The notes beneath the pieces were generated by a model that was not told the origin of the DNA, did no database searches, and worked only from the letters and a program-made list of their open reading frames with translations. The position numbers and the translations under genes are program-made. A stretch of 64,000 bases of DNA from Penicillus capitatus (Eukaryota > Plantae > Chlorophyta), in contig OZ287696.1 of NCBI GenBank assembly GCA_965649825.1, positions 1,274,081 through 1,338,080 on the forward strand, written 5' to 3'. Below are positions 5,388 to 41,453 of this stretch, one piece after another; positions within the stretch are counted from its first letter, which is position 1; each line of letters starts with the position of its first letter.

Positions 5388-5515
5388 AATTGCCATGAAA
5401 AAATGGCCTAAACAAGAATCAATCGCTCTATTAAACCCAGAATGTACCACAACAACTAGAACGTATACGATCAGCTCGATAATAGGCTGTCTGCTGCGTG
5501 ATGTCAGATTATAGG

Positions 5516-5897
5516 CTGCTGGAGGCTTCAGTATTGGCTGCCCGCTGCTGGAGGCTTGGTTTTATGCTGCCCGCTGCTGGAGGCTTCATTATATGCTGCC
5601 CGGCTGCTGGAGGCTTGATTTCATGCTGTCTGCTGGAGGCTTCATTATATGCTGCCCGCTGCTGGAGGCTTGATTTCATGCTGTCTGCTGGAGGCTTCAT
5701 TATATGCTGCCCGCTGCTGGAGGCTTCATTATATGCTGCCCGCTGCTGGAGGCTTCATTATATGCTGCCCGCTGCTGGAGGCTTCATTATATGCTGCCCG
5801 CTGCTGGAGGCTTGATTTCATGCTGTCTGCTGGAGGCTTGATTATATGATGTCTGCTGCTAGAGAATTGATTATATGCTGCCCGCTGCTGGAGGCTT
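5516..5897. repeat. 29/26-bp minisatellite (core ctgctggaggctt), about 13-14 copies, with degenerate copies to ~6145
   Basis: Units ctgctggaggcttcattatatgctgcccg (29 nt) and ctgctggaggcttgatttcatgctgt (26 nt) are interleaved. Confidence 0.9.
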
Positions 5898-6169
5898 AGA
5901 CAAAAGGCTTCTGGAGCCTTCATCAAAGGCTGTCGTCTCAATCGTAGGCTGTCGGATGTAGAATCTCAGGCTGCTGGAGGCTTCTTGATAGGTCCTCCCT
6001 CGTCTTCATCAAAGGCTGCTGGAAGCTTCATGATAATCTGCTGTCTGCTGGAGGCTTGATAATCATCTGCTGTCTGCTGGAGGCTTGATAATCTGCTGTC
6101 TGCTGCTGTCAAATCAAAGGATATATGCTGCTGGAGGCTTCATTGTAGATAGTAGTCTTCATCCCCGCT

Positions 6170-8290
6170 GTCCGATGCCGGCTGTCGGCTGTCTTCGCCG
6201 TCTTTACCGCCGACTGTTGATCGCCAGCATCTTCACCGCCGGCTGTCGGCACATCGCCGACTTCATCGAAGGCTGTCCACGCAGGCTACTTCACACGGCA
6301 GTCGAATGCCGGCTTTCTCACCGCCTGCTAGCTTCGCTTCCGACTTCTTCGCCGCCGGCTGCTGGTTGCCCGCTGTCGTCTTCGTCGCAGGCTGTCTTTA
6401 TGGTCGTCTGTCGGGGCTGTCGTCTTCGTCGTCGCCGTCTGTGGATGCCGGTGGCCTCTTCATTACTGGCTGTCGCCGCCGCCGACTGTCTTGGCCGTCG
6501 GCAGTCTTGGCCTGTTGTCTTTATGGCCGGCAGTCTTGGGTGCCGGCTTTCTCACCGACTGCTGGCTTCTTCATCCGGCTGTCGGATGCCAGCTTACTCA
6601 CCGCCGGCTGTCGGCTGTCTTCGCCGGCTTTGCCGCTGACTGTTGATCACCAGCTTCTTCGCCGGCAGTCTGGGCCGGCTGTCAGATGCCGGCTATCGTC
6701 TTCGCCGCCGACAGTCTTCCTCTCCGGCTGTGGATGCCGGCCGTCTTCATGGCCGGCTGTGGGGGCCGGCTCTCAGGGCTGGCGGCTGTCGTCGCCGCCA
6801 GCTGTCTTCAGAGCCGGCTGTGGGGGCCGGCTCTCAAGGCCACCGGCTTCTTCGTTGCCGGCTTCATCGCCGCCGGCTGTGGATGCCGGCCGTCTGTCGG
6901 GGCCGGCGGCTTCTTCGTGGCCGGCTTCACCGCCGCCGGCTGTCTTCCTCTCTGGCTGTCTTGGCCGGCGGCTTCTTCATGGCCGGCTAATATGGCCGGC
7001 TTCACCGCCGCCGGCTGTCTTCCTCTCTGGCTGTCTTGGCCGGCGGCTTCTTCATGGCCGGCTAATATGGCCGGCTGTCTCGGGTGCCGGCTGTGAGATC
7101 CGGCTATAATGGTCGGCTGTGGATGCCGGCTGTCGGGGCCGTCTGTCTTACTCTCCGGCAGTCGTGGGGGCTGGCTGGCTGTCTCCGCGGGCAGTCTTAG
7201 CCGCCAGCTTTTGGGCCCGGCGGCTTCTTCATGGCCGGTTGTCGCCACCGGCTGTTGGGCCCGGCCGTCTTCATGGCCGGCTGTGGGTGCCGCGGGCAGT
7301 CTTGGCCGCCGGCTGTGGGGGCCGGCTGTCAGGGCCGGCTGTCAGGGCCGGCTGACGGATGCCGGCGGCTGTGGGGCCGGCTGTCTTCATAACCGGCCGT
7401 CTTCGCCGCCGGCTGTCTTGGCCGGCTGTCTTCAGAGCCGGCTGTGGGGGCCGGCGGCTTCTTCATGGCCGGTTGTCGCCACCGGCTGTTGGGCCCGGCC
7501 GTCTTCATGGCCGGCTGTGGGGGCCGCGGGCAGTCTTGGCCGCCAGCTGTGGGGGCCGGCTGTCTTCATGGCCGGCTGACGGATGCCGGCGGCTGTGGGG
7601 CCGGCTGTCTTCATGGCCGGCTGACGGATGCCGGCCGTCTTCATGGCCGGCCGGCTGTCGCCGCCGGCTGTCTTCAGAGCCGGATGTGGGGGCCGGCGGC
7701 TTCTTCATGGCCGGTTGTCGCCACCGGCTGTTGAGGCCGGCCGTCTTCATGGCCGGCCGGCTGTCGCCGCCGGCTGTCTTCAGAGCCGGCTGTGGGGGCC
7801 GGCGGCTTCTTCATGGCCGGTTGTCTCCACCGGCTGTTGGGCCCGGCCGTCTTCATGGCCGGCTGTGGGGGCCGCGGGCAGTCTTGGCCGCCAGCTGTGG
7901 GGGCCGGCTGTGGGGGCCGGCTGTGGGGGCCGCGGGCAGTCTTGGCCGCCAGCTGTGGGGGCCGGCTGTGAGGGCCGGCTGACGGATGCCGGCCGTCTTC
8001 ATGGCCGGCTTTCTTCAGAGCCCTCTGTGGGGGCCGGCCGTCTTCATAGCCGGCTGCGGGGGCCGGCTGCGGGGGCCGGCTGTTGGCGCCGGCGGTTTCT
8101 TCATGGCCGGCTGTCGCCACCGGCTGCGGGGGCCGGGGCTGTTGTGGCCGGCCGTCTTCATGGCCGGCTCTCTCGGGTGCCGGCTTCTCCATCCGGCTGT
8201 CATGGCCGGCTGTTTTCGTAGCCGGCTGTGGGGGCCGGCTGTCTTCAAAGCCGGCTGTCGGGGCCGGCCGTCTTCATGGCCGGCGTCTTG
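6170..8290. repeat. GC-rich complex satellite built from gccggc-containing modules
   Basis: Shuffled modules gccggctgtggg, gccggctgtctt, cttcatggccgg and ggttgtcgccacc, with longer duplicated blocks and very dense CCGG sites. Confidence 0.88.
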
Positions 8291-9772: not shown

Positions 9773-12565
9773 TCAAAATCTCTCACCGACGTTGATCATA
9801 AGCGATCCCTTTCCAAGATTCGTATCTCTCGAGTATTCGAGTCTAGCTGGGCCGACCTTCAGTCCTGCTCCATATGTCACTCCAGATCCTGGCTTTCGGA
9901 AATAGACTGTCGGATTTCCAGGGACATCCTTTGACGAATTTAGATCCCATGCACCTTCTGCAAAGGCATACATCTGCTGATTAATGAAGGGCGTTGGCAA
10001 TCTCAACTCCGCGGCTGCTTCCAGAAAATGGCGAGAGGTACCCAACTCGCCAAGATTGACACCCCTAACCGAATGAGGCCCGCCCAGAGGGAAAGCATCG
10101 TAAGAGGCAAGATCTCCAAGAGCACATCCAAGCTTGCCATGCAGCACCAACACTTTTGGCACTCGGAATCCAGTAGATTCTCTCAGTTTTACGAAACGGG
10201 TCATGGAGACGACTAGTCGATTAAAGAAACCACCGATGCCTGTGCCTTGATCGACAAGATACATGTCGCGTGCACCTACTGGGGCGCCATTGACAGAGTA
10301 CGTCGTATCACGGACCACGTTTGCCTGGAAGTATATTTGTTGATCTTGGCCTTCTCCTAACGTCGTAGGAGGCCCATCATTCTGAGAGGCATTGCGGAAT
10401 CCTCTCGAGATGATGGTTCCTGAGTCATCGTACGTCATGATCTCTTGCATCACAATACCCATACTGCTGCGACTGTTGCAGCTGTGTTGTTCATTCAGTG
10501 AGAGCTTGGCCCCCGATCGGTGCACAAAAACTGGGGGAACCTCCTCTCCTGTTGGCCCCGCCGTGAAGACGCTGCTGATGCGACGGGAATTGAAAACGAT
10601 TCCACTCAATGATGTCTTCTTCGGATCCCTTTCTCCGAGAATATACGGTCTCTTCATTTCGATCTTGTAACCAATGTCTCGTGGATCGAAGACGTTGGAA
10701 GTGGTCACCGTGCCTGTCAGGTTATTGCCTTTGCCCAGCAGATTGCGGTGATCGATCAAGATCGTGGCGCCAGGGATGACGGATTCCGGCAACGGAATAC
10801 CATTCTGTCGACGAACTTGCCAGTCGAGTTCGATCTACACACAACTCTGGCCGTTGTCAGACAATGACAGTGTTGTGGCGACCTCTGTTGTCCTCATCGG
10901 ACGTTCCTTCACCATGACCGTCACATCCACCAGCCGCTCATCTCTGCGATTCTGCTCCGGCAGAACCTGAACGTTCTCGTACATCCCTGTAGCGATCAGA
11001 TCCCGCAACGCCCGACGACTGTCCTCCTGATTGTACAGCTGTCCTTTCTACATCACAAACAATACTGCCACATTATTCTCTGCATCGGACACAGTGGCCT
11101 TCCAGAGGTACAGACGGACAGAGTGAATAGACTCAGAGTACGCGATTCTACATCGGTCGTCGCAACGTTGCACGACTGCAAGGCAACGAGCTTCATAGAT
11201 AAGATCAAGTTTCGGTCATCATCGTCTGCGAGATGTATAAAGGCAGGAATGTAAACGTACCACGAACGATAGCTCTCTGCGGATGAAGCTGTGTGGTGTT
11301 GCATTCCCTCTCTTCTTCTCGTTGCCTTCGTCGTCGACAAACATCACTTTCACCGAATTCACACGACCCTCGATCACTTTGGCAACCACGTTTCCAGACA
11401 GGAGACCATCAAAGGTTCGAATGTATGACATGATATATCCACGATCTTGATACCTAAGCACCAACCATGTCTGTATAGTCCAATGTTATAGGGGTGACCC
11501 TTCACAACCATTTCTCGACGATATTGCGCATCATGCCAAGTGTCTGGATAGTGACTTTTGGCGCCGATTGTCCAGTGGTGATGTCGTGGTGGTACGTGTC
11601 CAGGACTTCGTCCACCACCTCGTCCGGAATGGCTTCAGCGCCTTCCGTTTTGAAACTCGTCATTTCAGGATACTCCGAAGATTTGAACACAAAGCTCACA
11701 TCACACTTTTTCCCTTTGGTCCCTTTTACTGGGGTCACACGGATCTCGACATGGTCCACGCCCTCCGTACTACACAGCACATACCACGTGCTTACCATCT
11801 CCCACGACGGCAGAAACAAACTTACTGTGAGAGCGTCTTAAGATCTTTACGCAGCTCCTCCTGTGTGCATCGGAATCCGGGTTGGCAATTGATCCCGGCA
11901 AAGAGATCCACATCTCTCGGGACACCGGGGCCGTTCGGTAAGCCAATGGCTGAGATCTTGTTGCATTCGAAGGGCGCTGTTGGATCGACGTAATCTTCCT
12001 CGTCGATATCCTCATCGAGGTACTCTTCGATTTCGCCCTCTTCTGATTCTTCCTCTTCTTCCTCTTCGCCTATTTCTTCTTCCTCTTCATCAGCTTCTTC
12101 GCCATCGCCCGTCTCCTCTTCCTCTTCGGTGACGGCAATCTGGAACAGTTCTTGTCCTGACGGATTTCCGCCGCCCCCATCGCCACCGCCACCCTCGCCG
12201 GGCGTCTCTCCGTTTCCGCCGCCACCGGAAGCGAGGGATTGGATATAGTGAAGACAGCTTTTGAGCGATGTTGTGTTCATGGCCCCAGTGATCGTGACCG
12301 CAAAGGCGAATCCTGGAGCGACGGACGCGACAGAGGGTCGGAGCCACGATAGCCCTCGATGGTCCATCTTGCGTGCGCAGATGCGTTGAGAATGAATCGT
12401 TCGCGGTGGTAAAGGCGCCGAACGGACAATGGGTGTCCAGGAGGGCTTTCGTGTCACGGAAGAGTTGCGAACAAAAGGCATCGAGATGCGTTTGTTTTGC
12501 AACGAAGTGTTCGAAGGAGATGACGAGAACGACCGCATTTGTGCAAAACAAGACGAAAACGTCAT
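9773..12565 (-). CDS. TOC75: Chloroplast outer-envelope translocon channel Toc75 (Omp85 family), multi-exon
   Basis: Ser/Arg-rich transit peptide, then a poly-Gly stretch (the Toc75-III stop-transfer hallmark), POTRA exons (GYIMSYIRTFDG; VIEGRVNSVKV) and a beta-barrel ending ...YGAGLKVGPARLEYSRDTNLGKGSLMINVGERF. Confidence 0.9.
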
Positions 12566-13646: not shown

Positions 13647-15356
13647 GTGATGTCCGCGGATTTGAATGAAACGCGCGACGCCGCAGCACCTGACGAATTA
13701 CCAGTGGACTCGAGTTCGCAAAACAACGCAGCGAATAAAGGCTGGGAGAAAGTTCGGCGAAAAGTTATGTCTATCGTTGGAGCGTCCTGTAATTTTCATA
13801 CACTCCGAGACATGTACGGCGAAATCGTCCTTGAGCCTGCCAAGCTTAAACTGATAAAGACAATAGCAAGTACGCCCCGGACAGACCGATTAAGGCCAAC
13901 CTCCATTTTGTCAATATTCAGCGGGGAATTATGGAACCGTCGCCGAATTTGAGTACACTGAGGAAGATGGACAGACAACGCGCCTGGCAATAAAGAGACT
14001 GAGGCCTGGAGATGTCTCAGCACAGGTATACCCACACTAGGGTGGACTTCATCTTCACTAACAGAGGGAGAATGGCAACAGGGATTCCTGGATTTTATGA
14101 AAGAGGTCAAAATTCTCAAACAGGTAAGAAGTCTCGTCTGACAGAACCGCACTGAGCTCTGATGGGCTGCTTACCAGTTGAGGCATAGTCGCATTGCTGC
14201 GTTTCGTGGGACGGGATATCTCCCAGCCGAGAATGAAGGAGAAGAAGATGACCTTTTCTTGGTTACACACATCCTAAGCTGACACTTGTGTGATGCGATG
14301 GCGTCTGGTCGAGGTCAGGCACAAGAACTTATGGACGGTGGGACGCTGAGAGCAAAATTGGAGAAACAGAGAGCAATGAAAGACGAGAAACTCTACTCAT
14401 TGTGCGATTGTGTTTGCACGAGACAGAGGGCAGTCAGTTGTCTACGTGTGTATGGTTTGCAGATCAGAAGGGCTAACGTGGTTGTTCGATGTTGCATGTG
14501 CATTGGCTTATCTCCACAATTCTGAACCGTTGGTTATTCACAGAGATCTGAAGCCCGAGAACATCATGCTCACACGTATGTCCCGCACAGTTGTCTGCTC
14601 AGCTCGTCAAACGGCCTTTCAGAAGACCAAGTCGCCAAGATTGTCGACTTTGGTCTGCACAAAGTCGTTGGTAACACATCTTGCCTGACGGGGAGTACAT
14701 GCGATTCATGTGGCACCGTTTAGACAAATGGGAGAGAGAAGACGCGCGGGATGAAGATGGATTTTATGACATGACAGGCGGAACAGGAGCATATGTTTAC
14801 ATGGCTCCCGAGGCCTTCTTAGGCCACAGATACAATCACAAAGTTGACGTTTTTTCATTTGCCATTGTTGCGTGGGAAGTCGTGCACTACCAAATGTTGA
14901 TTACAAGAGTGTGCGTGACTGGCTCTGCTTCCGAAGTGAAGAACTATGCAAAGTATGTGGCAAAAGAAGGATTCCGGCCGCAACTCTCCGGGACATTACC
15001 GAAAGCTTTGGGTAAGAACAGCGATACATCTCTGTCCTCTGTTATGGCCACCTGAATGCGCAGCGGATTTAATTGATCAGATGTGGCAGCAAGACCCAAC
15101 CAATCGGTAATCCCCTTCACTGTTAATGCATGGATGATGTGTGACGTAGCCCCGAGTTCAACGAAATTGTTACAAGACTCAAAAAGATTCTCGGTATGCT
15201 CTGCACGAATCCGCCGATCAGATGTTGAAAGGAGACGTGTTTGTTGTAGACGAAGTGAAAGAAAAGGAAGAGCGAGATCGCGTCAAAGATGTGCCCAGAT
15301 CGCCGTCGCCGCCGCCTAAGAAGTCATGGAAGTTATTGTGCTGCTTTGGCGCCTGA
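13647..15356 (+). CDS. TKL-group Ser/Thr/Tyr protein kinase, multi-exon
   Basis: HRDLKPENIML, DFGLHK, YDMTGGTGAYVYMAPE, KVDVFSFAIVAWE; the C-terminus reads KKSWKLLCCFGA*. Confidence 0.88.
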
Positions 15357-33658: not shown

Positions 33659-35246
33659 TCATTTCTTTCTGTTGAGAACGAGATCGGACAGATGCAACAG
33701 AGCATCGTGGGCACACTGCGCCTCCTCGTGCATCGGAACTGGAAATTGATGCACCTGGAAGCAACACGAGTCATGATCCTGCTGACGGACAAAGGGTAAA
33801 TGATCATCTCACCATTTTCTGAGCATCTCTCGTGTGCTGGCTTGCCAGTTCTCTCGCTTTCTGAATTCCCGAGCTCTTGTGTATAAGATCGATCGCCTGA
33901 GAGAAGTGGCAGCTGCCGAGAAGCTGAGAATCGCATGTACCTTGTCGATGTCGCCATTCTGTTTGAACTTGCGAACGATGAGCGGTCGGAGTTCTGGGAA
34001 TTCGTTCATGGCAAAGAGCACCTGGTCAACCGAACAGACCATTGCTCAATGGAATGAGCGCACTCTCTTGGCATACCTCCTCACCGGAGCAGTGGAGATG
34101 CCACTGTGGATATCATTCAATGCCGGTTTGCCAAGCTCTCCACTCGTCGATGTGAAATCCAATACATCATCCACAATCTAAACCTCCCTCCACACGTGAC
34201 AATCGCCACCGCCGTGTTATACGCTCTCACTTGGAATGCCATTCCGAGATGGCGGCCGTAATGAAAGACTCTCTCACAGATCTGTGCGCCGCCACCAGCA
34301 CACAGAGTGATCGATTGTCGTGGCACGCAATGAGGGGAGTACTTCTGGTCCGTGGCCTCCCAAAATGGCTGCCGCTTTGGAGCTGTTTGCCATGAGGGAT
34401 GCCGTTTTCTTGAACGTCTTTTCCAAGTAGTATTCCATTCTCACCAAATCCTCATCTGTCGCTGTCATCTAGCATCTCACTCTTTTGCCTATCCAGCGAC
34501 ATTGTGATCACACTATTTACTTGCATGATTTCGCCACTGACAAGGTTTTCCAAGATCTTTGCCATCAGCATGATGACTTCGGGATGACGCAAGGCCGCCA
34601 ATGTCACCGATGCGCGTGCCAGAAGGAAATCTCCGGCCAAAATGGCGAGCTTATTGCCCATTTCTGCGTTTAATGAACTCATCCCGCGTCGCGTTTCGGC
34701 ATTGTCGATCACATCGTCATGCAACAGACTCGTCACATGCATCAACTCGGCAATCTCCGCCAGGCGTTGCTGCCGTCGTCGCTCTTCGCGAATGTACGTC
34801 GACGAATGACGTTCGTCCACTGTAAAGCGATCTGGCGAGAGTGGCGTCGGACTGAGAGCCGTCGCGAGCAAGAGCAGCAGACTCGGACGAAAGCGCTTCC
34901 CTTCGGCTCCAAATTTTAAAAAATAATCGGCCGCGTGAGAGAGCGCCGGGATCTCGGTGACCACACTCAGACGAATACGTTCCGATACCGTCTCCACCTC
35001 GCGACGGACGATTCCGAGTGGGTCTTTAGGATCTGGACCGTCTCCATGCGCTGACTAGAATCTCTTTGGCATCGAGGCGATAGATACCAGCCATTACCTG
35101 AATGCTCGGCACCGAGGCGAAGCCCCACGAGTAGAGTCCTGTAGGCGTGCGTGTGTTCGTTCGTTCGCGGAGTCAGTAGATCGACGCGAACCGTGTGGAA
35201 GAGGGAAGCGACAGAGGAAGGGCTGAACGCGACGACAAAGCGCCAT
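33659..35246 (-). CDS. Trans-long-chain prenyl (solanesyl/decaprenyl) diphosphate synthase, probably mitochondrial (COQ1/SPS3-like)
   Basis: GKRFRP, LLHDDVID...RRG, LAGDFLLARAS, KKTASL, LGMAFQ/IVDDVLD. The spliced N-terminus MALCRRVQPFLCRFPLPHG looks like a presequence. The C-terminus reads LSDLVLNRKK*. Confidence 0.9.
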
Positions 35247-35300
35247 GCCGCTGCGAATGATGCCATCTATGTACGTCGGTGTCATCTTGATGTCCATGCA

Positions 35301-36534
35301 ATGCTCGTGTTCATCGTGGTCTACGCCGTTGTCGTCGCTTCCATCGTGCTGGTGCTCTTGGTTGGAGAATGGCCATTGTTTCGCAAGACACCTGTCTCGT
35401 GGTGCCATTGGTTCGTGACAACAGGCTTCCTGGAATGGAGCCTGTAATAACAAACACCACAGTGCTCACGCTTGGCGGCGAGACTCATGGACCGTCTGCT
35501 TTAGGGCGGGGATAGAGAGATTCTGTGGCAGACGCATTGTGGATAGAGTGATGGAAATTGAACAGATCTGCTGCGAACGGCGCAATCCCATCGTGCAGGT
35601 GAGATGAGGATTCTAGGCATCGCTGATGACGTGCTTGATTACAGATTTTCTATGGTCTGATCTTGGTCATCTGCTACACCGTCTACTACACGTCCCTCTT
35701 TTCACATCTCCCCAGTAAAGGACTGGCGCATTATCACGTGTCCGCGATCGCTTCCGAATTTCCGCTCTAGTGACACATCGCGCCCTCTGTGCAGGTATAC
35801 AGGGACCGTCATGGCGTTGCTGTGCTTGCTGATGTTCGTCGCATGTTCTGTGTCGGATCCGGGAACCGTGACAGCTGATAACGTGGACCGCTACATTGCA
35901 CTGTTTCCGTACGACAATCTCATTTTCCGAGAAGCCCGCTGCGGCACCTGTCACATCACGAAACCAGCTCGATCTAAACACTGCAGCATCTGCAAGAGGT
36001 GCATTTCCTCGATGGCTCTGCCACGGTGACGTGTCTTCTAGGTGTGTTGCTCGCCACGATCATCATTGCATCTGGGTCAATAACTGCGTTGGTAGCAATA
36101 ACCATCGCTATTTCATCCTGTTCCTCCTCGTCAACTTCCTGGCATCGCTCTACGGGACAATCGCTGTGCCTCTCTTTCTCCACGGAGAAATCTCGCACTA
36201 TCTCTATCGCCCTCTGAGAGAACGCGCCACTGGAAAGTTCATCGTCCTGGCACAGCATCCCCGTCGACTGCTGGAACTCGTCGCGCTGCGTTACACATCC
36301 CTCTTCACACTCGGCTGCTGCACTGCCGGCTTCACTCTGCTGCTCCTTGCTTTCCTTGTCTACCATATCTACCTCATCTGCGTTGGCAAGACATCCAACG
36401 AGCTGTTCAAATGGCGCCGACTGCCAAAAGAGAAGAGGGGTCGCGGAAGCAATCGATATAACAAGGGCTGGCGACAGAATTTTATGGAGGTGCTATTTCC
36501 AATAGACGTCAATCGTCACCTGAAGGATCTATAA
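35301..36534 (+). CDS. DHHC protein S-acyltransferase (SWF1/PAT17-like), multi-exon
   Basis: [21 protein letters not shown] / [16 protein letters not shown]; TM helices; C-terminal [17 protein letters not shown] motif; stop TAA at 36532-36534. Confidence 0.92.
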
Positions 36535-37466
36535 TGGGCGCACTGCTTTCGTATTTTGGAAGATATGAGACATATTACGCAAACTACGAAAAAGCTTTTG
36601 CGAAGCTAGAGAAAACGAAAGGAGATGTTCATAAACGCACGGCGTCGCGAACGACGCGTCGGAAGACGCTGTCTCGTACCTTTCTCTACTGTGGCACGCT
36701 ACTGACCCTCTTGGCCGCCATCTACGCATCTTGGGTGAATCTTGATATCGGCAAGATGTCTTTCCAATGCCTCTGTCCCGTCGAATAGGTTTTCCGCCAA
36801 GATGATGCCTTGTTTACATCCAGAGGCCGCATGCTACGGATATCCTTCTTTGTATTGGTTCCTACAGTACTTGCCATGTTGCATCACGGCTTGCTGTGTT
36901 GTTTTGATTTTTTGCATAAATGGGATGAACGGCAATTGGTGAAGGTTGAGAAATCGATGGATGACATGCTGAAAGAACTGAAAGTCACATCAGCTACGCA
37001 TTCAATCGTGCATCTTACTGTATGTCTTTACAGGATCGGAATCGCTACAATAAGATTCAAGAGCTTCTGCAGAGATACGATCCGGAAGAACGACAGAAGA
37101 TGGAACTGCTGAAAACGATCAAGAAAGGACCACCAGCCCCTTCTCTCGAATCTTCGCCCGTCACATCAGAACAGAAGAAAATGTCGATTGGCACCTCGCT
37201 GATGTACGGAGCTGGCAAAATCGTAGACAGTTTGGCAAATAAGATCATTGGTGATCAGCCAGAGCTGATTGCTGAAGTCGAGTACGCGTTACCCGGCCGT
37301 TTCTTAGTGTCTTCCAATGTGGTTGGTATCTGCTAGGAAGCTGCGATCCATGCTGCATGCATTGGAAGAGAAGAACGAAGCTCTGCAGCGCGAGAATGAG
37401 GATTTGAAGTCACAGTGCACTCCTCACCCGCCTTCTGTTAGCAGCGAAACGTCACATCATGAATAA
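36534..37466 (+). CDS. LNP: Lunapark-like ER junction protein, apparently without the Zn ribbon
   Basis: Myristoylation-type start MGALLS, coiled coil, two TM helices, then ELK/DRNRYNKIQELLQRYDP, which matches the Lunapark core. Confidence 0.75.
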
Positions 37467-37496
37467 TCAAGCGGACTGGCGTCGCTGCTGTCCAGA

Positions 37497-37501
37497 TGTA
37501 A
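37497..37501 (+). promoter_or_regulatory. TGTAA, chlorophyte-type polyadenylation signal after the Lunapark-like gene
   Basis: TGTAA lies about 30 nt after the stop codon, within the 80-bp gap before SRP54. Confidence 0.5.
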
Positions 37502-39137
<1,636 letters not shown>

Positions 39138-39262: not shown

Positions 39263-40356
39263 ATGGAATTCGACAGTGGACACTCGGATGCCGTCAATGC
39301 ATTGCAACTGGATTACTATGGCCGACGGGTCGCAACGGCATCCTCGGACCATACCATACGCGTTTTCGATATCGGCGCAGAGACACCAACGCATGTCGCG
39401 ACGCTGCAAGGACACACAGGACCTATCTGGAATGTGGCATGGGCGCATCCAAAATACGGATCCTTGCTCGTCTCTTGTTCGTTTGACGCTACCGTCATCG
39501 TTTGGAAGGAGACAGAAACGGGCTGGGTTCAGGTCTGGTCCGAGAGACTGGCGATTGAGGCGCATACGTGTCGAGATGGTGTGTAGTTGTATCGGAGTCC
39601 ACCTACCGTGCATTCTGCCTCGGTCAACGGAGTGGCGTGGGCATCGCACGAAGCGGGATTGATGTTTGCATCTGCCTCGTCTGATGGATCTGTCTGCGTC
39701 TTCGAGTGTCAATCGGATGGGAGTTGGACAGAATTGAAGGCAGAGTAGATAGGATATGCAAGAGTTGAGGCATGACGTGTGTGGATATAGATTCCGGGCG
39801 TCGATGCCATTTCGTGCACTTCTATCTCCTGGGCATCGCCTGGTTTGTCCGATTCGCTGACAAACGAAAGCGGTGATGCGCAAACATCTATGCAGTTGGT
39901 TGTCGGCGGATGCGAGAACTGCTTAAAGGTGTGAGATATCTCACACTTTTGAACGGGTACCAAGACAAACGTCTGCTTAGATTCTATCAAGGACTGCTAA
40001 CGCCGCCTGGCGATTGGAACAGAGGTTGGTTGCACATACCGACTGGATTCTGGATGTTGCCTGGGCGCCGATGCTGTCGACAGTACGTCCCACGATCGCG
40101 AGTGTGGGACAAGACGGCAAGGCACATCATCTCACACTTTTTTTTCGCTTCTCACACATGATTACAGGTCATTGTATGGAAAGAGCGGGCTAAAGGTCAA
40201 TGGGAGCATCACATCGTTCACGAAACGGCCGTTCCTGTCTGCGGTGTCCACTGGTCAGTGACTGGCAATGTCTTGGCCGCAATGGATGCACATCAAGACG
40301 TCTTTTCATGGAAAGAGAATCAGCTAACCGGCAAATGGACGCTACTGAAAGACTAG
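39263..40356 (+). CDS. SEC13: SEC13 WD40 protein (COPII/nuclear pore), multi-exon
   Basis: FDSGHSDAVNALQLDYYGRRVATASSDHTI; GHTGPIWNVAWAHPKYGSLLVSC; SVNGVAWASHEAGLMFASASSDG; HTDWILDVAWAP; WSVTGNVLA. Confidence 0.93.
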
Positions 40357-40391
40357 TCCCTCGACACGATGTCGGTCCGATCACATGATGA

Positions 40392-41453
40392 ATGGCATTA
40401 TCACACTCCTTCAGATCGATGATCGCGCGCGGGGCACATTTGCGCGTATCATCACGTCGTCCGCTATCGCGTCGATGCGAGACCACGAGGCGCAGTCATC
40501 TGCGCGAACGTCTAGCGCGACGCCAACGAGGAATGGCGGTAAACCGTGAAGACGGGGATGCTTCTCCGACATTCGGTAGCACAACGCCTATCGGTGCGGA
40601 GTATGGCGAAGGCTTCGAGGTGTACAGCGCCCCTGGTCAATATCTAGACCTCATCGACGTGGCTGCTCTCAATCGAACGCTGCGCACGACGGGAGCTCAA
40701 CGTCTACGTCACGCCATGAAACCTGACGAAGCACTGGGTGCCATTTTTGTTCTGGAGGGTGTCTTGGCGGACACTCGACCTCTGAGAGAGATGGCATGGA
40801 AACTCCTGGCGGCGGAGAACAAACTATCCCTCCCTACCATCATGCGACCATTGATGTTCGATCTCCCTCCGATCAAAGTGATGACGGAGGTTCTGCAATG
40901 GAGTCGAGATGTGGGGACAGCACGGAGTCTCGCCCATCGATTGGGTCAGATTTACTGTGAGCTGTTTCTGGATTTGGATGAGCCTCAGCCAGGGACGGTC
41001 GAATGGCTCAGAGCATTGGAGAAGACAAACGTGCCGTGTGCCGTGATCAGTCACATGTCGAGAGAGGATGTCCAAATCGTGCTGCAGAAGATGGGTCTGC
41101 ACAGCTTCTTTGTCGCCGTCGTGGCATTCGAGGACGACATGGAAACGATGGCGCAGCAGTATCTCTGTGCCGCTTTGAAATTGGAACGGCCTCCGGATCA
41201 TTGCATTGTCTTTGATCATTCTCCCACAGGCGTCGCTGCAGCACACAACTGCACGATGAAAGCGGTGGCGGTGCAAGGATATTTCAAAGGCTATCAGCTG
41301 AAACAGGCTGATGTGACGTGTGCCTCACTGAACGAGTTGTCTGTGTACAATCTACGACGACTCTTTGCAAATCGAGGCGCTGAGTTTATGGATCAGTTGA
41401 AGGGGAAGGACACGAGAAAGGACAGAAGGAAAAACACTATTGCGACGCTGTAA
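40392..41453 (+). CDS. Plastid HAD-like hydrolase (At3g10970/PyrP2-like subfamily), intronless
   Basis: Arg/Ser-rich transit peptide; KPDEALGAIFVLEGVLADT (non-canonical motif I typical of this subfamily); KLERPPDHCIVFDHSPTGVAAAHNCTMKAVAV; ADVTCASLNELSVYNLRRLFAN. Confidence 0.85.
   Translation: MALSHSFRSMIARGAHLRVSSRRPLSRRCETTRRSHLRERLARRQRGMAVNREDGDASPTFGSTTPIGAEYGEGFEVYSAPGQYLDLIDVAALNRTLRTTGAQRLRHAMKPDEALGAIFVLEGVLADTRPLREMAWKLLAAENKLSLPTIMRPLMFDLPPIKVMTEVLQWSRDVGTARSLAHRLGQIYCELFLDLDEPQPGTVEWLRALEKTNVPCAVISHMSREDVQIVLQKMGLHSFFVAVVAFEDDMETMAQQYLCAALKLERPPDHCIVFDHSPTGVAAAHNCTMKAVAVQGYFKGYQLKQADVTCASLNELSVYNLRRLFANRGAEFMDQLKGKDTRKDRRKNTIATL

What the first reader, a model, noticed from the sequence alone, without database searches (positions are those of the whole stretch)
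36500..36560. DHHC acyltransferase stop codon overlaps the Lunapark start codon (TAATG)
Seen: ...gatcta-TAATG-ggc. Both ends look natural: DHHC ends shortly after its conserved NxYxxGxxxNFxEVLFP motif, and Lunapark starts with the myristoylation-type MGxxxS. There is no intergenic DNA. A TAATG overlap is the classic translational-coupling (stop-restart) signature of viruses and bacteria. The bicistronic algal loci I know of are mostly attributed to leaky scanning, which is hard here because the upstream ORF is long and ATG-rich. Inference: a termination-reinitiation bicistron in a nuclear gene pair of ER membrane proteins.
Basis: partly seen in the sequence, partly recalled or inferred. Interest (0 to 1): 0.7.

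Follow-up and report, generated by a model that had tools for sequence, protein, structure and literature searches.

The report
Overlapping DHHC and Lunapark-like algal genes
In an uncultured, very gene-dense green alga related to Caulerpa, the stop codon of a palmitoyltransferase gene shares one base with the start codon of a Lunapark-like ER protein gene, and the pair has stayed within 17 bases in five related genomes; whether the second protein is made from a shared mRNA or from its own nested one cannot be decided without RNA data.

Summary
The DHHC stop TAA (36532-36534) and the next gene's ATG (36534-36536) share A36534.

- **Gene ends:** homologues support both. The DHHC tail is 10 residues after the conserved FP motif. 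The downstream protein starts MG, and Gly2 is near-invariant in its family.
- **Identity of gene 2:** it matches Lunapark only in the N-terminal membrane/coiled-coil part. It lacks the Lunapark zinc ribbon and ends in a leucine-zipper-like coil.
- **Source:** an ENA metagenome contig from a green alga nearest Caulerpa lentillifera.
- **Conservation:** TAATG recurs in two other genomes (L005/L006, L009). Two more have spacers of 10 nt (L008) and 17 nt (L012). The Caulerpa gene model fuses the two genes. Outer neighbours differ. The genes are apart in Bryopsis, L007 and L001.
- **Leaky scanning:** implausible, with 9-23 AUGs before the second start and no depletion.
- **Termination-reinitiation:** not shown. 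There is no TURBS-like motif or junction structure, and the whole locus is hypercompact (head-to-head ATGs 34 nt apart; tandem spacers 35-126 nt), so promoters embedded in neighbouring genes must be routine.

My best reading (0.45) is overlapping transcription units with a nested Lunapark-like start site. A true reinitiation bicistron stays open (about 0.33).

The parts
35301..36534 (+). DHHC S-acyltransferase gene (plant PAT17-like), 342 aa. Exons 35301-35443, 35505-35598, 35645-35739, 35795-35998, 36042-36534. Introns 61, 46, 55 and 43 nt.
   Evidence: Pfam PF01529 E=1.1e-34. Model built and corrected against relatives. The same four intron positions occur in L005 and L009. Best homologues are Caulerpa lentillifera at 55%, Bryopsis at 44% and plant PAT17.
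36532..36536 (+). TAATG: the DHHC stop (36532-36534) and the Lunapark-like start (36534-36536) share A36534.
   Evidence: The identical TAATG occurs in L005/L006 and L009. L008 has a 10-nt spacer and L012 a 17-nt spacer.
36534..37466 (+). Lunapark-like ER membrane protein gene, 257 aa. Exons 36534-36734, 36789-36983, 37034-37281, 37337-37466. It has an MG start, two hydrophobic segments (~50-69 and ~85-107), a YDPEE motif, a GDQPE motif, and then a leucine-zipper-like coil in place of the zinc ribbon.
   Evidence: Model. The profile search gave 134 hits. Gly2 is near-invariant. Distant hits carry PF10058 while this protein and its near relatives do not. Hydropathy.
37497..37501 (+). First sense-strand TGTAA downstream of the DHHC stop, 31 nt after the Lunapark-like stop. 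It is a candidate shared poly(A) signal.
   Evidence: conserved in L005. UGUAA is the poly(A) near-upstream element of core chlorophytes including ulvophytes, peaking about 17 nt before the cleavage site (PMC1868727). Sense TGTAA also occurs inside coding exons here (31733), so the motif is suggestive only.
37467..37546 (+). 80-nt spacer between the Lunapark-like stop and the SRP54 ATG (37547). It is more conserved than the coding sequence around it.
   Evidence: 96% identity to L005, against 77% for introns and 80-92% for exons.
35264..35300 (.). Head-to-head junction. The likely first ATG of the polyprenyl-diphosphate synthase gene on the minus strand (CAT at 35264-35266) lies 34 nt from the DHHC ATG at 35301.
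   Evidence: ORF 34967..35266(-) and the PF00348 ORF 34452..34997(-). L009 has the same arrangement with 20 nt between the ATGs (read by eye). The minus-strand start codon is inferred, not proven.

Best explanation
This is a real tandem gene pair that is old within the Caulerpa-related clade, squeezed to zero spacer in a hypercompact green-algal nuclear genome.

Shown:
- Both genes are intact, and the stop and start share one base.
- The two genes lie within -1 to +17 nt of each other in five related genomes, although the genes flanking the pair differ.
- Leaky scanning from the DHHC cap is implausible.

Inferred:
- The two transcription units overlap.
- DHHC transcripts probably run into or through the Lunapark-like gene, as far as the TGTAA at 37497.
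- The Lunapark-like protein is probably made mainly from a shorter mRNA. Its start site would lie inside the last DHHC exon and its leader would be very short.
- This matches how the neighbours must work. SRP54 and Sec13 each have a TGTAA only 29-45 nt before their ATG. The divergent synthase/DHHC pair has start codons only 34 nt apart.
- The pair then stays together because there is no DNA between the genes where a rearrangement could cut without damaging one of them.
- Some reinitiation at TAATG on read-through transcripts may add to expression, but it is not required.
For: - **Compaction at every junction of the locus.** Tandem spacers are -1, 80, 126 and 35 nt, and the head-to-head ATGs are 34 nt apart. 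In L009 the head-to-head gap is 20 nt and the Lnp-to-ProB spacer is 15 nt.
- **TGTAA close to the next start.** The TGTAA after SRP54 lies 29 nt before the Sec13 ATG. With cleavage about 17 nt after UGUAA (PMC1868727), the Sec13 start site must lie upstream of the SRP54 poly(A) site.
- **An example of a constrained control region.** The Lnp-SRP54 spacer is 96% conserved, against 77% for introns.
- **The gene works on its own elsewhere.** The Lunapark-like gene stands alone in Bryopsis, about 1.85 Mb from DHHC. In L007 it follows about 600 nt of non-coding DNA.
- **No reinitiation elements.** There is no TURBS-like motif and no junction structure.
- **A hint of extra constraint.** All 11 same-residue codons among the last 14 DHHC codons are identical between the window and L005, against about 0.70-0.75 elsewhere. 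This is weak evidence.
- **Precedent.** Overlapping transcripts are documented in other compacted eukaryotic genomes (Williams et al. 2005, as cited in PMC3629993).
Against: - No transcript data exist for this organism, so no start site or poly(A) site has been observed.
- Apart from the last ~40 nt, the DHHC 3' end is no more conserved than the rest of the exon. It lacks the strongly conserved block seen before SRP54.
- No sense TGTAA lies between the DHHC stop and the end of the Lunapark-like gene in the window, L005, L008 or L012. That fits a single shared transcript.
- A related, intron-free contig (L001) carries the Lunapark-like ORF and the next ORF (ProB) on one transcript-like molecule.
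- In Chlamydomonas, a second ORF placed 3-7 nt after the stop of ORFs up to 654 codons long is expressed (PMC5144980).
Confidence: 0.45

Rival explanations
1. True bicistron with termination-reinitiation. One capped mRNA carries DHHC and the Lunapark-like ORF and is polyadenylated after TGTAA 37497. Ribosomes that terminate at UAA reinitiate at the overlapping AUG, or at an AUG 10-17 nt downstream in relatives. In L009 the unit may extend to a third ORF (ProB) 15 nt further on.
For: - The stop and start lie within -1 to +17 nt in five genomes spanning a deep clade, while outer neighbours change.
- There is no room for a promoter and no sense TGTAA between the ORFs.
- Leaky scanning is excluded by 9-23 AUGs, several in strong context.
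- The Lunapark-like AUG has a purine at -3 and G at +4 in the three overlapping cases.
- The transcript-like contig L001 spans the Lunapark-like ORF and ProB.
- The Caulerpa gene model merges the two genes.
- Chlamydomonas expresses a second ORF 3-7 nt after long first ORFs (PMC5144980).
- Polycistronic mRNAs are widespread in chlorophytes (PMC7896298).
Against: - Reinitiation after a 342-codon ORF is normally inefficient, so a structural ER protein would be capped at a fraction of the level of a low-abundance enzyme (my own knowledge).
- No TURBS motif or junction structure is present.
- Experiments on algal bicistrons favour leaky scanning over reinitiation (PMC11892635).
- TAATG conservation is also expected without coupling, because stop loss is harmful in any case.
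- The locus-wide compaction gives a simpler explanation.
- The gene works as a separate unit in Bryopsis and L007.
Confidence: 0.33
2. Spliced fusion protein. A donor near the DHHC end joins Lunapark-like exon 2 and skips the stop codon and exon 1, as in the Caulerpa lentillifera models g1665.t1 and g1665.t2.
For: - The Caulerpa models fuse DHHC to Lunapark-like exons 2-4.
- In the window, GAC|GTCAAT at 36508 would join the exon 2 acceptor (36788/36789) in frame.
- In L009, CAT|GTAAAA would do the same (read).
Against: - Exon 1 is conserved as protein: YYANYEKAFAKLEK and the first membrane segment.
- Gly2 is near-invariant, which implies a free N-terminus.
- The intron would be 281 nt in a genome whose introns are 40-61 nt.
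- Skipping the first membrane segment would flip the C-terminal domain to the wrong side of the membrane (inference).
- L008 offers no in-frame donor near the DHHC end.
- A gene predictor merging two genes 17 nt or less apart is a common artefact.
Confidence: 0.04
3. Leaky scanning on a bicistronic mRNA, the mechanism shown for Chlamydomonas and Auxenochlorella bicistrons.
For: It is the experimentally supported mechanism in green algae (PMC11892635).
Against: - The first ORF is 1029 nt, against a median of 291 nt in Auxenochlorella.
- It carries 9, 12, 16 and 23 AUGs before the second start in four taxa, with observed/expected 0.65-1.2. Four or five are in strong context in the window and L005, and two in L009.
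Confidence: 0.02

Closest known systems
[quoted passage not shown] 2005 PNAS, cited in PMC3629993)
   Same: Spacers are tiny or absent, so promoters and terminators must lie inside neighbouring genes. Transcripts are expected to start in the upstream gene or end in the downstream one. Gene pairs are held together by the lack of neutral DNA between them.
   Different: The host here is a free-living-type, intron-rich green-algal nuclear genome, not a parasite or an endosymbiont remnant. No transcript data exist yet. An actual one-base overlap of two coding sequences, kept in two deep lineages of a clade, is an extreme case.
Green-algal nuclear polycistronic loci (Gallaher et al. 2021, PMC7896298; PNAS 2025, PMC11892635)
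   Same: The pair is chlorophyte, colinear and very closely spaced, and it is conserved between species. A related transcript-like contig carries two ORFs.
   Different: Described loci have a short first ORF (median 291 nt in Auxenochlorella), AUG depletion before the second ORF and spacers of about 40-260 nt, and they are translated by leaky scanning. Here the first ORF is 1029 nt, it is not AUG-depleted, and the spacer is -1 to 17 nt.
Viral and retroelement termination-reinitiation at UAAUG/AUGA (caliciviruses, influenza B segment 7, victoriviruses, hypovirus; from my own knowledge)
   Same: The same pentanucleotide, a long upstream ORF, and a second ORF in another frame.
   Different: No 18S-complementary UGGGA motif and no upstream structure were found. 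This is a cellular gene pair, and single-mRNA status is not shown.
Synthetic stop-TAGCAT-ATG bicistrons in Chlamydomonas (Onishi and Pringle 2016, PMC5144980)
   Same: A long first ORF and a second ORF 3-7 nt after the stop, with no special element needed, in a chlorophyte.
   Different: That system is artificial, and its second-ORF expression is low and under drug selection. Its mechanism was later argued to be partly leaky scanning (PMC11892635).
Lunapark (Lnp1/LNPK), the ER three-way-junction protein
   Same: An MG start, a two-helix membrane hairpin, a coiled coil, the xYDPE motif and the GDxP motif. Profile-level homology over the N-terminal ~150 residues to proteins that carry PF10058.
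   Different: The defining zinc ribbon is missing and is replaced by a leucine-zipper-like coil. Bryopsis P0123, P0126 and P0127 also lack PF10058, and the other closer profile hits show no zinc-finger motif in the alignment.

Membership tests
Green-algal leaky-scanning bicistron | Both ORFs are found only on one mRNA | not testable with these tools
   No transcripts of this organism are on record. The only indirect evidence is the related intron-free contig L001, which spans the Lunapark-like ORF and ProB.
Green-algal leaky-scanning bicistron | Short first ORF with AUG depletion upstream of the second ORF | tested here: not met
   The first ORF is 1029 nt. It has 9, 12, 16 and 23 AUGs, with observed/expected 0.65-1.2. 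Published medians are about 0.48 (PMC11892635).
Green-algal leaky-scanning bicistron | Short inter-ORF distance and conserved colinearity | tested here: met
   Spacers of -1, -1, -1, 10 and 17 nt in five genomes.
TURBS-type termination-reinitiation | Stop and restart codons overlap or lie within a few nucleotides | tested here: met
   TAATG.
TURBS-type termination-reinitiation | 18S-complementary UGGGA motif and structure within about 100 nt upstream | tested here: not met
   No TGGGA within 130 nt upstream in four taxa. Fold z-score -0.96.
Overlapping transcription in compacted genomes | Pervasively minimal spacers at neighbouring gene junctions | tested here: met
   Tandem spacers of 35, 80 and 126 nt, and 34 nt head-to-head. 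The same holds in L005, L009 and L012.
Overlapping transcription in compacted genomes | Transcripts that start in the upstream gene or end in the downstream gene | not testable with these tools
   Only inferred, from the TGTAA that lies 29 nt before the Sec13 ATG.
Lunapark (Pfam PF10058) | C-terminal zinc ribbon CxxC...CxxC | tested here: not met
   No PF10058 hit. Near relatives lack it too, while distant profile hits have it at E=1e-17 to 1e-21.
Lunapark (Pfam PF10058) | MG start, two-helix hairpin and coiled coil, homologous to Lunapark N-terminal regions | tested here: met
   Gly2 is near-invariant. Hydrophobic segments lie at ~50-69 and ~85-107. The profile reaches PF10058-bearing proteins over positions 1-150.
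DHHC S-acyltransferase | DHHC cysteine-rich domain with an intact DHHC motif | tested here: met
   PF01529, E=1.1e-34. The [15 protein letters not shown] motif is invariant in the alignment.

The most novel reading that the evidence does not exclude
A nuclear termination-reinitiation operon conserved across the Caulerpa-related clade of green algae. DHHC and the Lunapark-like ORF, and ancestrally a third ORF (glutamate 5-kinase, 15 nt further on in L009), would be translated one after another from a single mRNA despite a 342-codon, AUG-rich first ORF. This would be a translation mode distinct from the leaky scanning shown for other algal bicistrons.
Probability: 0.3. Interest if true: 0.8.

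Novelty: new member of a known kind. Interest (0 to 1): 0.52.

Why it matters
All characterised green-algal bicistrons fit leaky scanning, with a short, AUG-poor first ORF. This pair cannot work that way. If it is expressed from one mRNA, it would be a natural cellular case of reinitiation after a long ORF, which is a long-debated possibility, and it would offer a compact element for co-expressing two proteins in algae. If it is expressed from nested mRNAs, it shows how far promoter and terminator embedding can go in a free-living, intron-rich algal nuclear genome, and why some gene pairs stay linked through deep time. Either way the question can be tested directly in Caulerpa lentillifera, a farmed alga with public genome and RNA data, where the current gene model g1665 appears to fuse the two genes wrongly. 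A side result is a lineage of Lunapark-like proteins that replaced the zinc finger with a leucine-zipper-like coil.

Tried and rejected
- **Exact-protein look-ups** of the spliced Lunapark-like and DHHC proteins, hoping for RNA-derived contigs, found nothing on record.
- **Database search with the Caulerpa Lunapark-like part**, to find Caulerpa RNA contigs, gave no hits and used the last search.
- **The metagenome scan** with the Lunapark-like alignment only re-found L001.
- **One look-up (P0124)** turned out to be the window's own exon 3.
- **Rfam and tRNA scans** of the window found nothing.
- **A crude test linking TGTAA to ends of long open frames** was not significant: 9 against 6.2±2.2. 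TGTAA is not globally depleted either: 66 against 62.6±7.8. I therefore use TGTAA only as a local hint. My earlier impression of depletion came from a mononucleotide expectation and was wrong.
- **My first DHHC model** used a GTAAAG donor that L005 does not conserve. I corrected it to exon 3 = 35645-35739, which restores the conserved HxYTG block.
- **Stop-codon read-through is rejected.** The DHHC frame hits TAG after 23 more codons and is not the Lunapark-like frame.
- **A -1 frameshift is rejected.** No slippery heptamer lies in the last 24 codons (read by eye), and the conserved MG start argues against any fusion.
- **Spliced-leader trans-splicing** was considered and not pursued. It is not known in green algae, and no SL RNA family was hit.
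- **A paper search for the sample and run accessions** found nothing, so I could not establish whether JGI 3300008031 (L001) is a metatranscriptome.
Full report
**Observation.** The window reads ...ctgaaggatctaTAATGggcgca. TAA occupies 36532-36534 and ATG 36534-36536, so the two codons share one base. The ORF listing reports 35896..36534(+) and 36534..36788(+).

I built spliced models for both genes.
- DHHC: exons 35301-35443, 35505-35598, 35645-35739, 35795-35998 and 36042-36534, giving 342 aa.
- Lunapark-like gene: exons 36534-36734, 36789-36983, 37034-37281 and 37337-37466, giving 257 aa.
- Introns are 43-61 nt.
- My first DHHC model used a donor that is not conserved in a relative. The corrected model restores the conserved HxYTG block seen in homologues.

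**Gene identities and ends.** The upstream protein matches Pfam DHHC at E=1.1e-34. It aligns end to end with plant PAT17-type acyltransferases. After the conserved NxYxxGxxxNFxEVxFP motif it has a 10-residue tail, within the range seen in homologues. The stop is therefore natural.

The downstream protein gets no Lunapark hit in Pfam, only weak leucine-zipper-type matches at its C-terminus. A profile search of 1.84 billion representatives gave 134 hits. In the alignment almost every member starts MG, and Gly2 is near-invariant. The six most distant hits I scanned all carry the Lunapark zinc ribbon PF10058 at E=1e-17 to 1e-21. The near hits I scanned (Bryopsis P0123, P0126, P0127, P0001) and the window protein lack it. 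Two hydrophobic segments lie at about residues 50-69 and 85-107. The gene is therefore a zinc-finger-less Lunapark relative, and its ATG at the TAATG is the true start. The frame is closed 24 codons upstream and holds no earlier ATG.

**Source organism.** The window is part of an 844-kb contig of the ENA metagenome assembly ERZ25074695. It has no rRNA, tRNA or Rfam hit. The closest DHHC is Caulerpa lentillifera (EukProt g1665, 55% identity), then Bryopsis sp. KO-2023 (44%).

**Relatives.** Using exon-level ORFs from the profile search as handles, I fetched the locus from other genomes.

| Locus | Source | DHHC to Lunapark-like junction | Context |
|---|---|---|---|
| Window | ENA ERZ25074695 | TAATG (overlap of 1 nt) | synthase(-) upstream; SRP54 80 nt downstream |
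| L005/L006 | ENA ERZ26696514, introns 77% and exons 80-92% identical, fully syntenic | gatcaaTAATGggc | same as window |
| L009 | JGI 3300022562, Lnp exon 1 only 38% identical | cagtcgTAATGgga | synthase(-) upstream; glutamate 5-kinase (ProB) 15 nt after the Lnp stop |
| L008 | Logan SRR20820736 | TGA + 10 nt + ATG | contig ends soon after |
| L012 | Logan ERR4592244, Caulerpa-like | TAA + 17 nt + ATG | upstream neighbour is LplA, not the synthase |
| C. lentillifera | EukProt g1665.t1/t2 | models run from the DHHC tail into Lnp exon 2 | the genes are adjacent there too |
| L007 | Logan SRR33785046 | separate | about 600 nt of non-coding DNA and another gene upstream |
| L001 | JGI 3300008031 | separate | 158 nt of non-DHHC leader |
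| Bryopsis | GCA_030272585.1 | separate | about 1.85 Mb apart on one scaffold, opposite orientation |

A tree of the Lunapark-like proteins supports a clade of the window, L005, L007, L001, L008, L009 and Caulerpa (100/98), with Bryopsis as sister (94/94). L007+L001 sits next to window+L005 (85/91). The simplest reading is that the tight pair arose in the ancestor of this clade and was broken once. L012 was not included in the tree.

**What conservation does and does not show.** The pair is held together while its outer neighbours change: synthase or LplA upstream, and SRP54 or ProB downstream. That points to a constraint. The constraint could be a shared mRNA, or simply the absence of any DNA between the genes where a rearrangement could cut without harm. 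The exact TAATG is weak evidence. In-frame changes upstream cannot move it, and losing the stop would extend DHHC by 23 residues across the other gene's start, which would be harmful under any model.

**Leaky scanning.** The spliced DHHC coding sequence holds 9 internal AUGs in the window, 12 in L005, 16 in L009 and 23 in L012. Observed/expected ratios are 0.65-1.2 (the window value is 1.4 sd below shuffles). Four or five AUGs are in strong context in the window and L005, and two in L009. Characterised algal bicistrons have first ORFs with a median of 291 nt (Auxenochlorella) and AUG ratios near 0.48 (PMC11892635).

**Reinitiation signals.** No UGGGA lies within 130 nt upstream of the junction in four taxa. 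The junction RNA is no more structured than shuffles, with z=-0.96. There is precedent that no special element is needed in a chlorophyte: in Chlamydomonas, a marker placed 3-7 nt after the stop of ORFs up to 654 codons is expressed at a low level (PMC5144980). That result was later reinterpreted as partly leaky scanning.

**Poly(A) signal logic.** UGUAA is the chlorophyte poly(A) element, including in ulvophytes, and peaks about 17 nt before the cleavage site (PMC1868727). On the sense strand of this gene cluster TGTAA occurs at:
- 35443, the donor site of DHHC intron 1;
- 37497, 31 nt after the Lunapark-like stop;
- 38830, in or near the SRP54 intron;
- 39229, 92 nt after the SRP54 stop;
- 41449, overlapping the stop of the HAD gene.

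There is none after the DHHC stop and none after the Sec13 stop. L005 shows the same pattern. This fits transcription units DHHC+Lnp, SRP54 and Sec13+HAD. The motif also occurs inside coding exons (31733, and L012 exon 2). It is not globally depleted (66 against 62.6±7.8), and a crude association test was not significant. I treat it as a hint only.

**Compaction.** The same data show that overlapping transcription units must be routine here.
- The TGTAA after SRP54 lies 29 nt before the Sec13 ATG.
- The Sec13 stop and the HAD ATG are 35 nt apart.
- The divergent synthase and DHHC start codons are about 34 nt apart, and 20 nt in L009 (the minus-strand start is inferred).
- The 80-nt spacer between the Lunapark-like gene and SRP54 is 96% identical to L005, while introns are 77%. 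Control elements are evidently packed into and around coding ends.

A promoter for the Lunapark-like gene inside the last DHHC exon therefore needs nothing unusual in this genome. Efficient reinitiation after 342 codons would be unusual. The last 14 DHHC codons show no synonymous change between the window and L005 (11 of 11, against about 0.7-0.75 elsewhere). This is a weak sign of extra constraint that either model could explain.

**Transcript-like evidence.** L001 has neither the Lunapark-like introns nor the ProB introns that its sister L007 and L009 carry. It holds both ORFs 48 nt apart on one 2351-nt contig. If it derives from RNA, molecules spanning two tightly spaced genes exist in this clade. 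This does not show which ORF is translated from them, and I could not establish the sample type.

**Other readings.**
- A spliced DHHC-Lunapark fusion like the Caulerpa model is possible on paper. In-frame donors exist at 36508 in the window and at CAT|GTAAAA in L009. It is unlikely, because exon 1 is conserved as protein, Gly2 is conserved, the intron would be 281 nt in a genome of 40-61-nt introns, and the topology would be wrong.
- Read-through and frameshifting do not reach the Lunapark-like frame in any sensible way.

**Verdict.** This is a real gene pair, old within its clade, with zero to 17 nt between the two ORFs. I rate nested, overlapping transcription units slightly higher (0.45) than a termination-reinitiation bicistron (0.33), because the former is what every other junction of this locus already requires. 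Both predict that DHHC transcripts run into the Lunapark-like gene. They differ on whether capped 5' ends exist inside the last DHHC exon. That can be checked with existing or easily made Caulerpa lentillifera RNA data.

Noticed in passing
window 36534-37466; also P0001, P0123 (Bryopsis), P0126, P0127, Caulerpa P0122: A lineage of Lunapark-like proteins has lost the defining zinc ribbon. After the conserved GDxPE motif they carry a leucine-zipper-like coiled coil instead, possibly a swapped dimerisation module. More distant hits keep NRYALICxxCxxHNG...CxxC.
   Followed up: partly
L009 3972-3994; L007 ~10347-10406; L001 963-1016: The Lunapark-like gene is followed by glutamate 5-kinase (ProB) after only 15, 56 and 48 nt in three relatives. 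In L009 this gives a DHHC-Lnp-ProB run with spacers of -1 and 15 nt, and the Lunapark-like stop sits inside a TGTAA. L001 is intron-free across both ORFs, so it looks like a two-ORF transcript.
   Followed up: partly
window 40354-40394 (L005 ~13860-13900): The Sec13 stop (TAG 40354-40356) and the ATG of a plastid-type HAD hydrolase (40392) are 35 nt apart, with two out-of-frame ATGs between them. There is no sense TGTAA until the one overlapping the HAD stop (41449). This is a second candidate shared unit, and L005 has the same layout.
   Followed up: partly
window 35264-35303; L009 1872-1897: The head-to-head polyprenyl-diphosphate synthase (minus strand) and DHHC (plus strand) have likely start codons only 34 nt apart (20 nt in L009). 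In L009 a three-codon uORF (ATGAAGAAATGA) overlaps the DHHC ATG as ATGA.
   Followed up: partly
window 37467-37546: The 80-nt spacer before SRP54 is 96% identical to L005, while introns are 77% and exons 80-92%. A CGTT(T/C)TCT block follows the TGTAA both here and in the SRP54-Sec13 spacer.
   Followed up: partly
window 5515-8284: About 2.8 kb of G+C-rich (67%), strongly strand-skewed, degenerate tandem repeats with units of 13-29 nt, such as GCCGGCTGTGGGG and GCCGGCTGTCTTCAT. This could be a repetitive coding region or a minisatellite.
   Followed up: no
Caulerpa lentillifera EukProt EP00210 g1665.t1/t2 (P0122, P0002): The published gene model joins the DHHC gene to exons 2-4 of the Lunapark-like gene and starts inside DHHC. 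It is probably an annotation artefact of two genes 17 nt or less apart, and it hides the Caulerpa Lunapark-like protein from searches.
   Followed up: partly
L005 10501-10530: In the close relative, the otherwise invariant KDRNRYNK motif of the Lunapark-like protein reads K-GNLYPE, with a 3-nt deletion. The rest of the gene stays intact.
   Followed up: no
L009 3526-3571; L012 8415-8713 and 9415-9464: Intron changes within the clade. L009 appears to have a GC-AG intron in the Lunapark-like gene. The Caulerpa-like L012 lacks DHHC intron 3 and has an extra intron in Lunapark-like exon 1.
   Followed up: no
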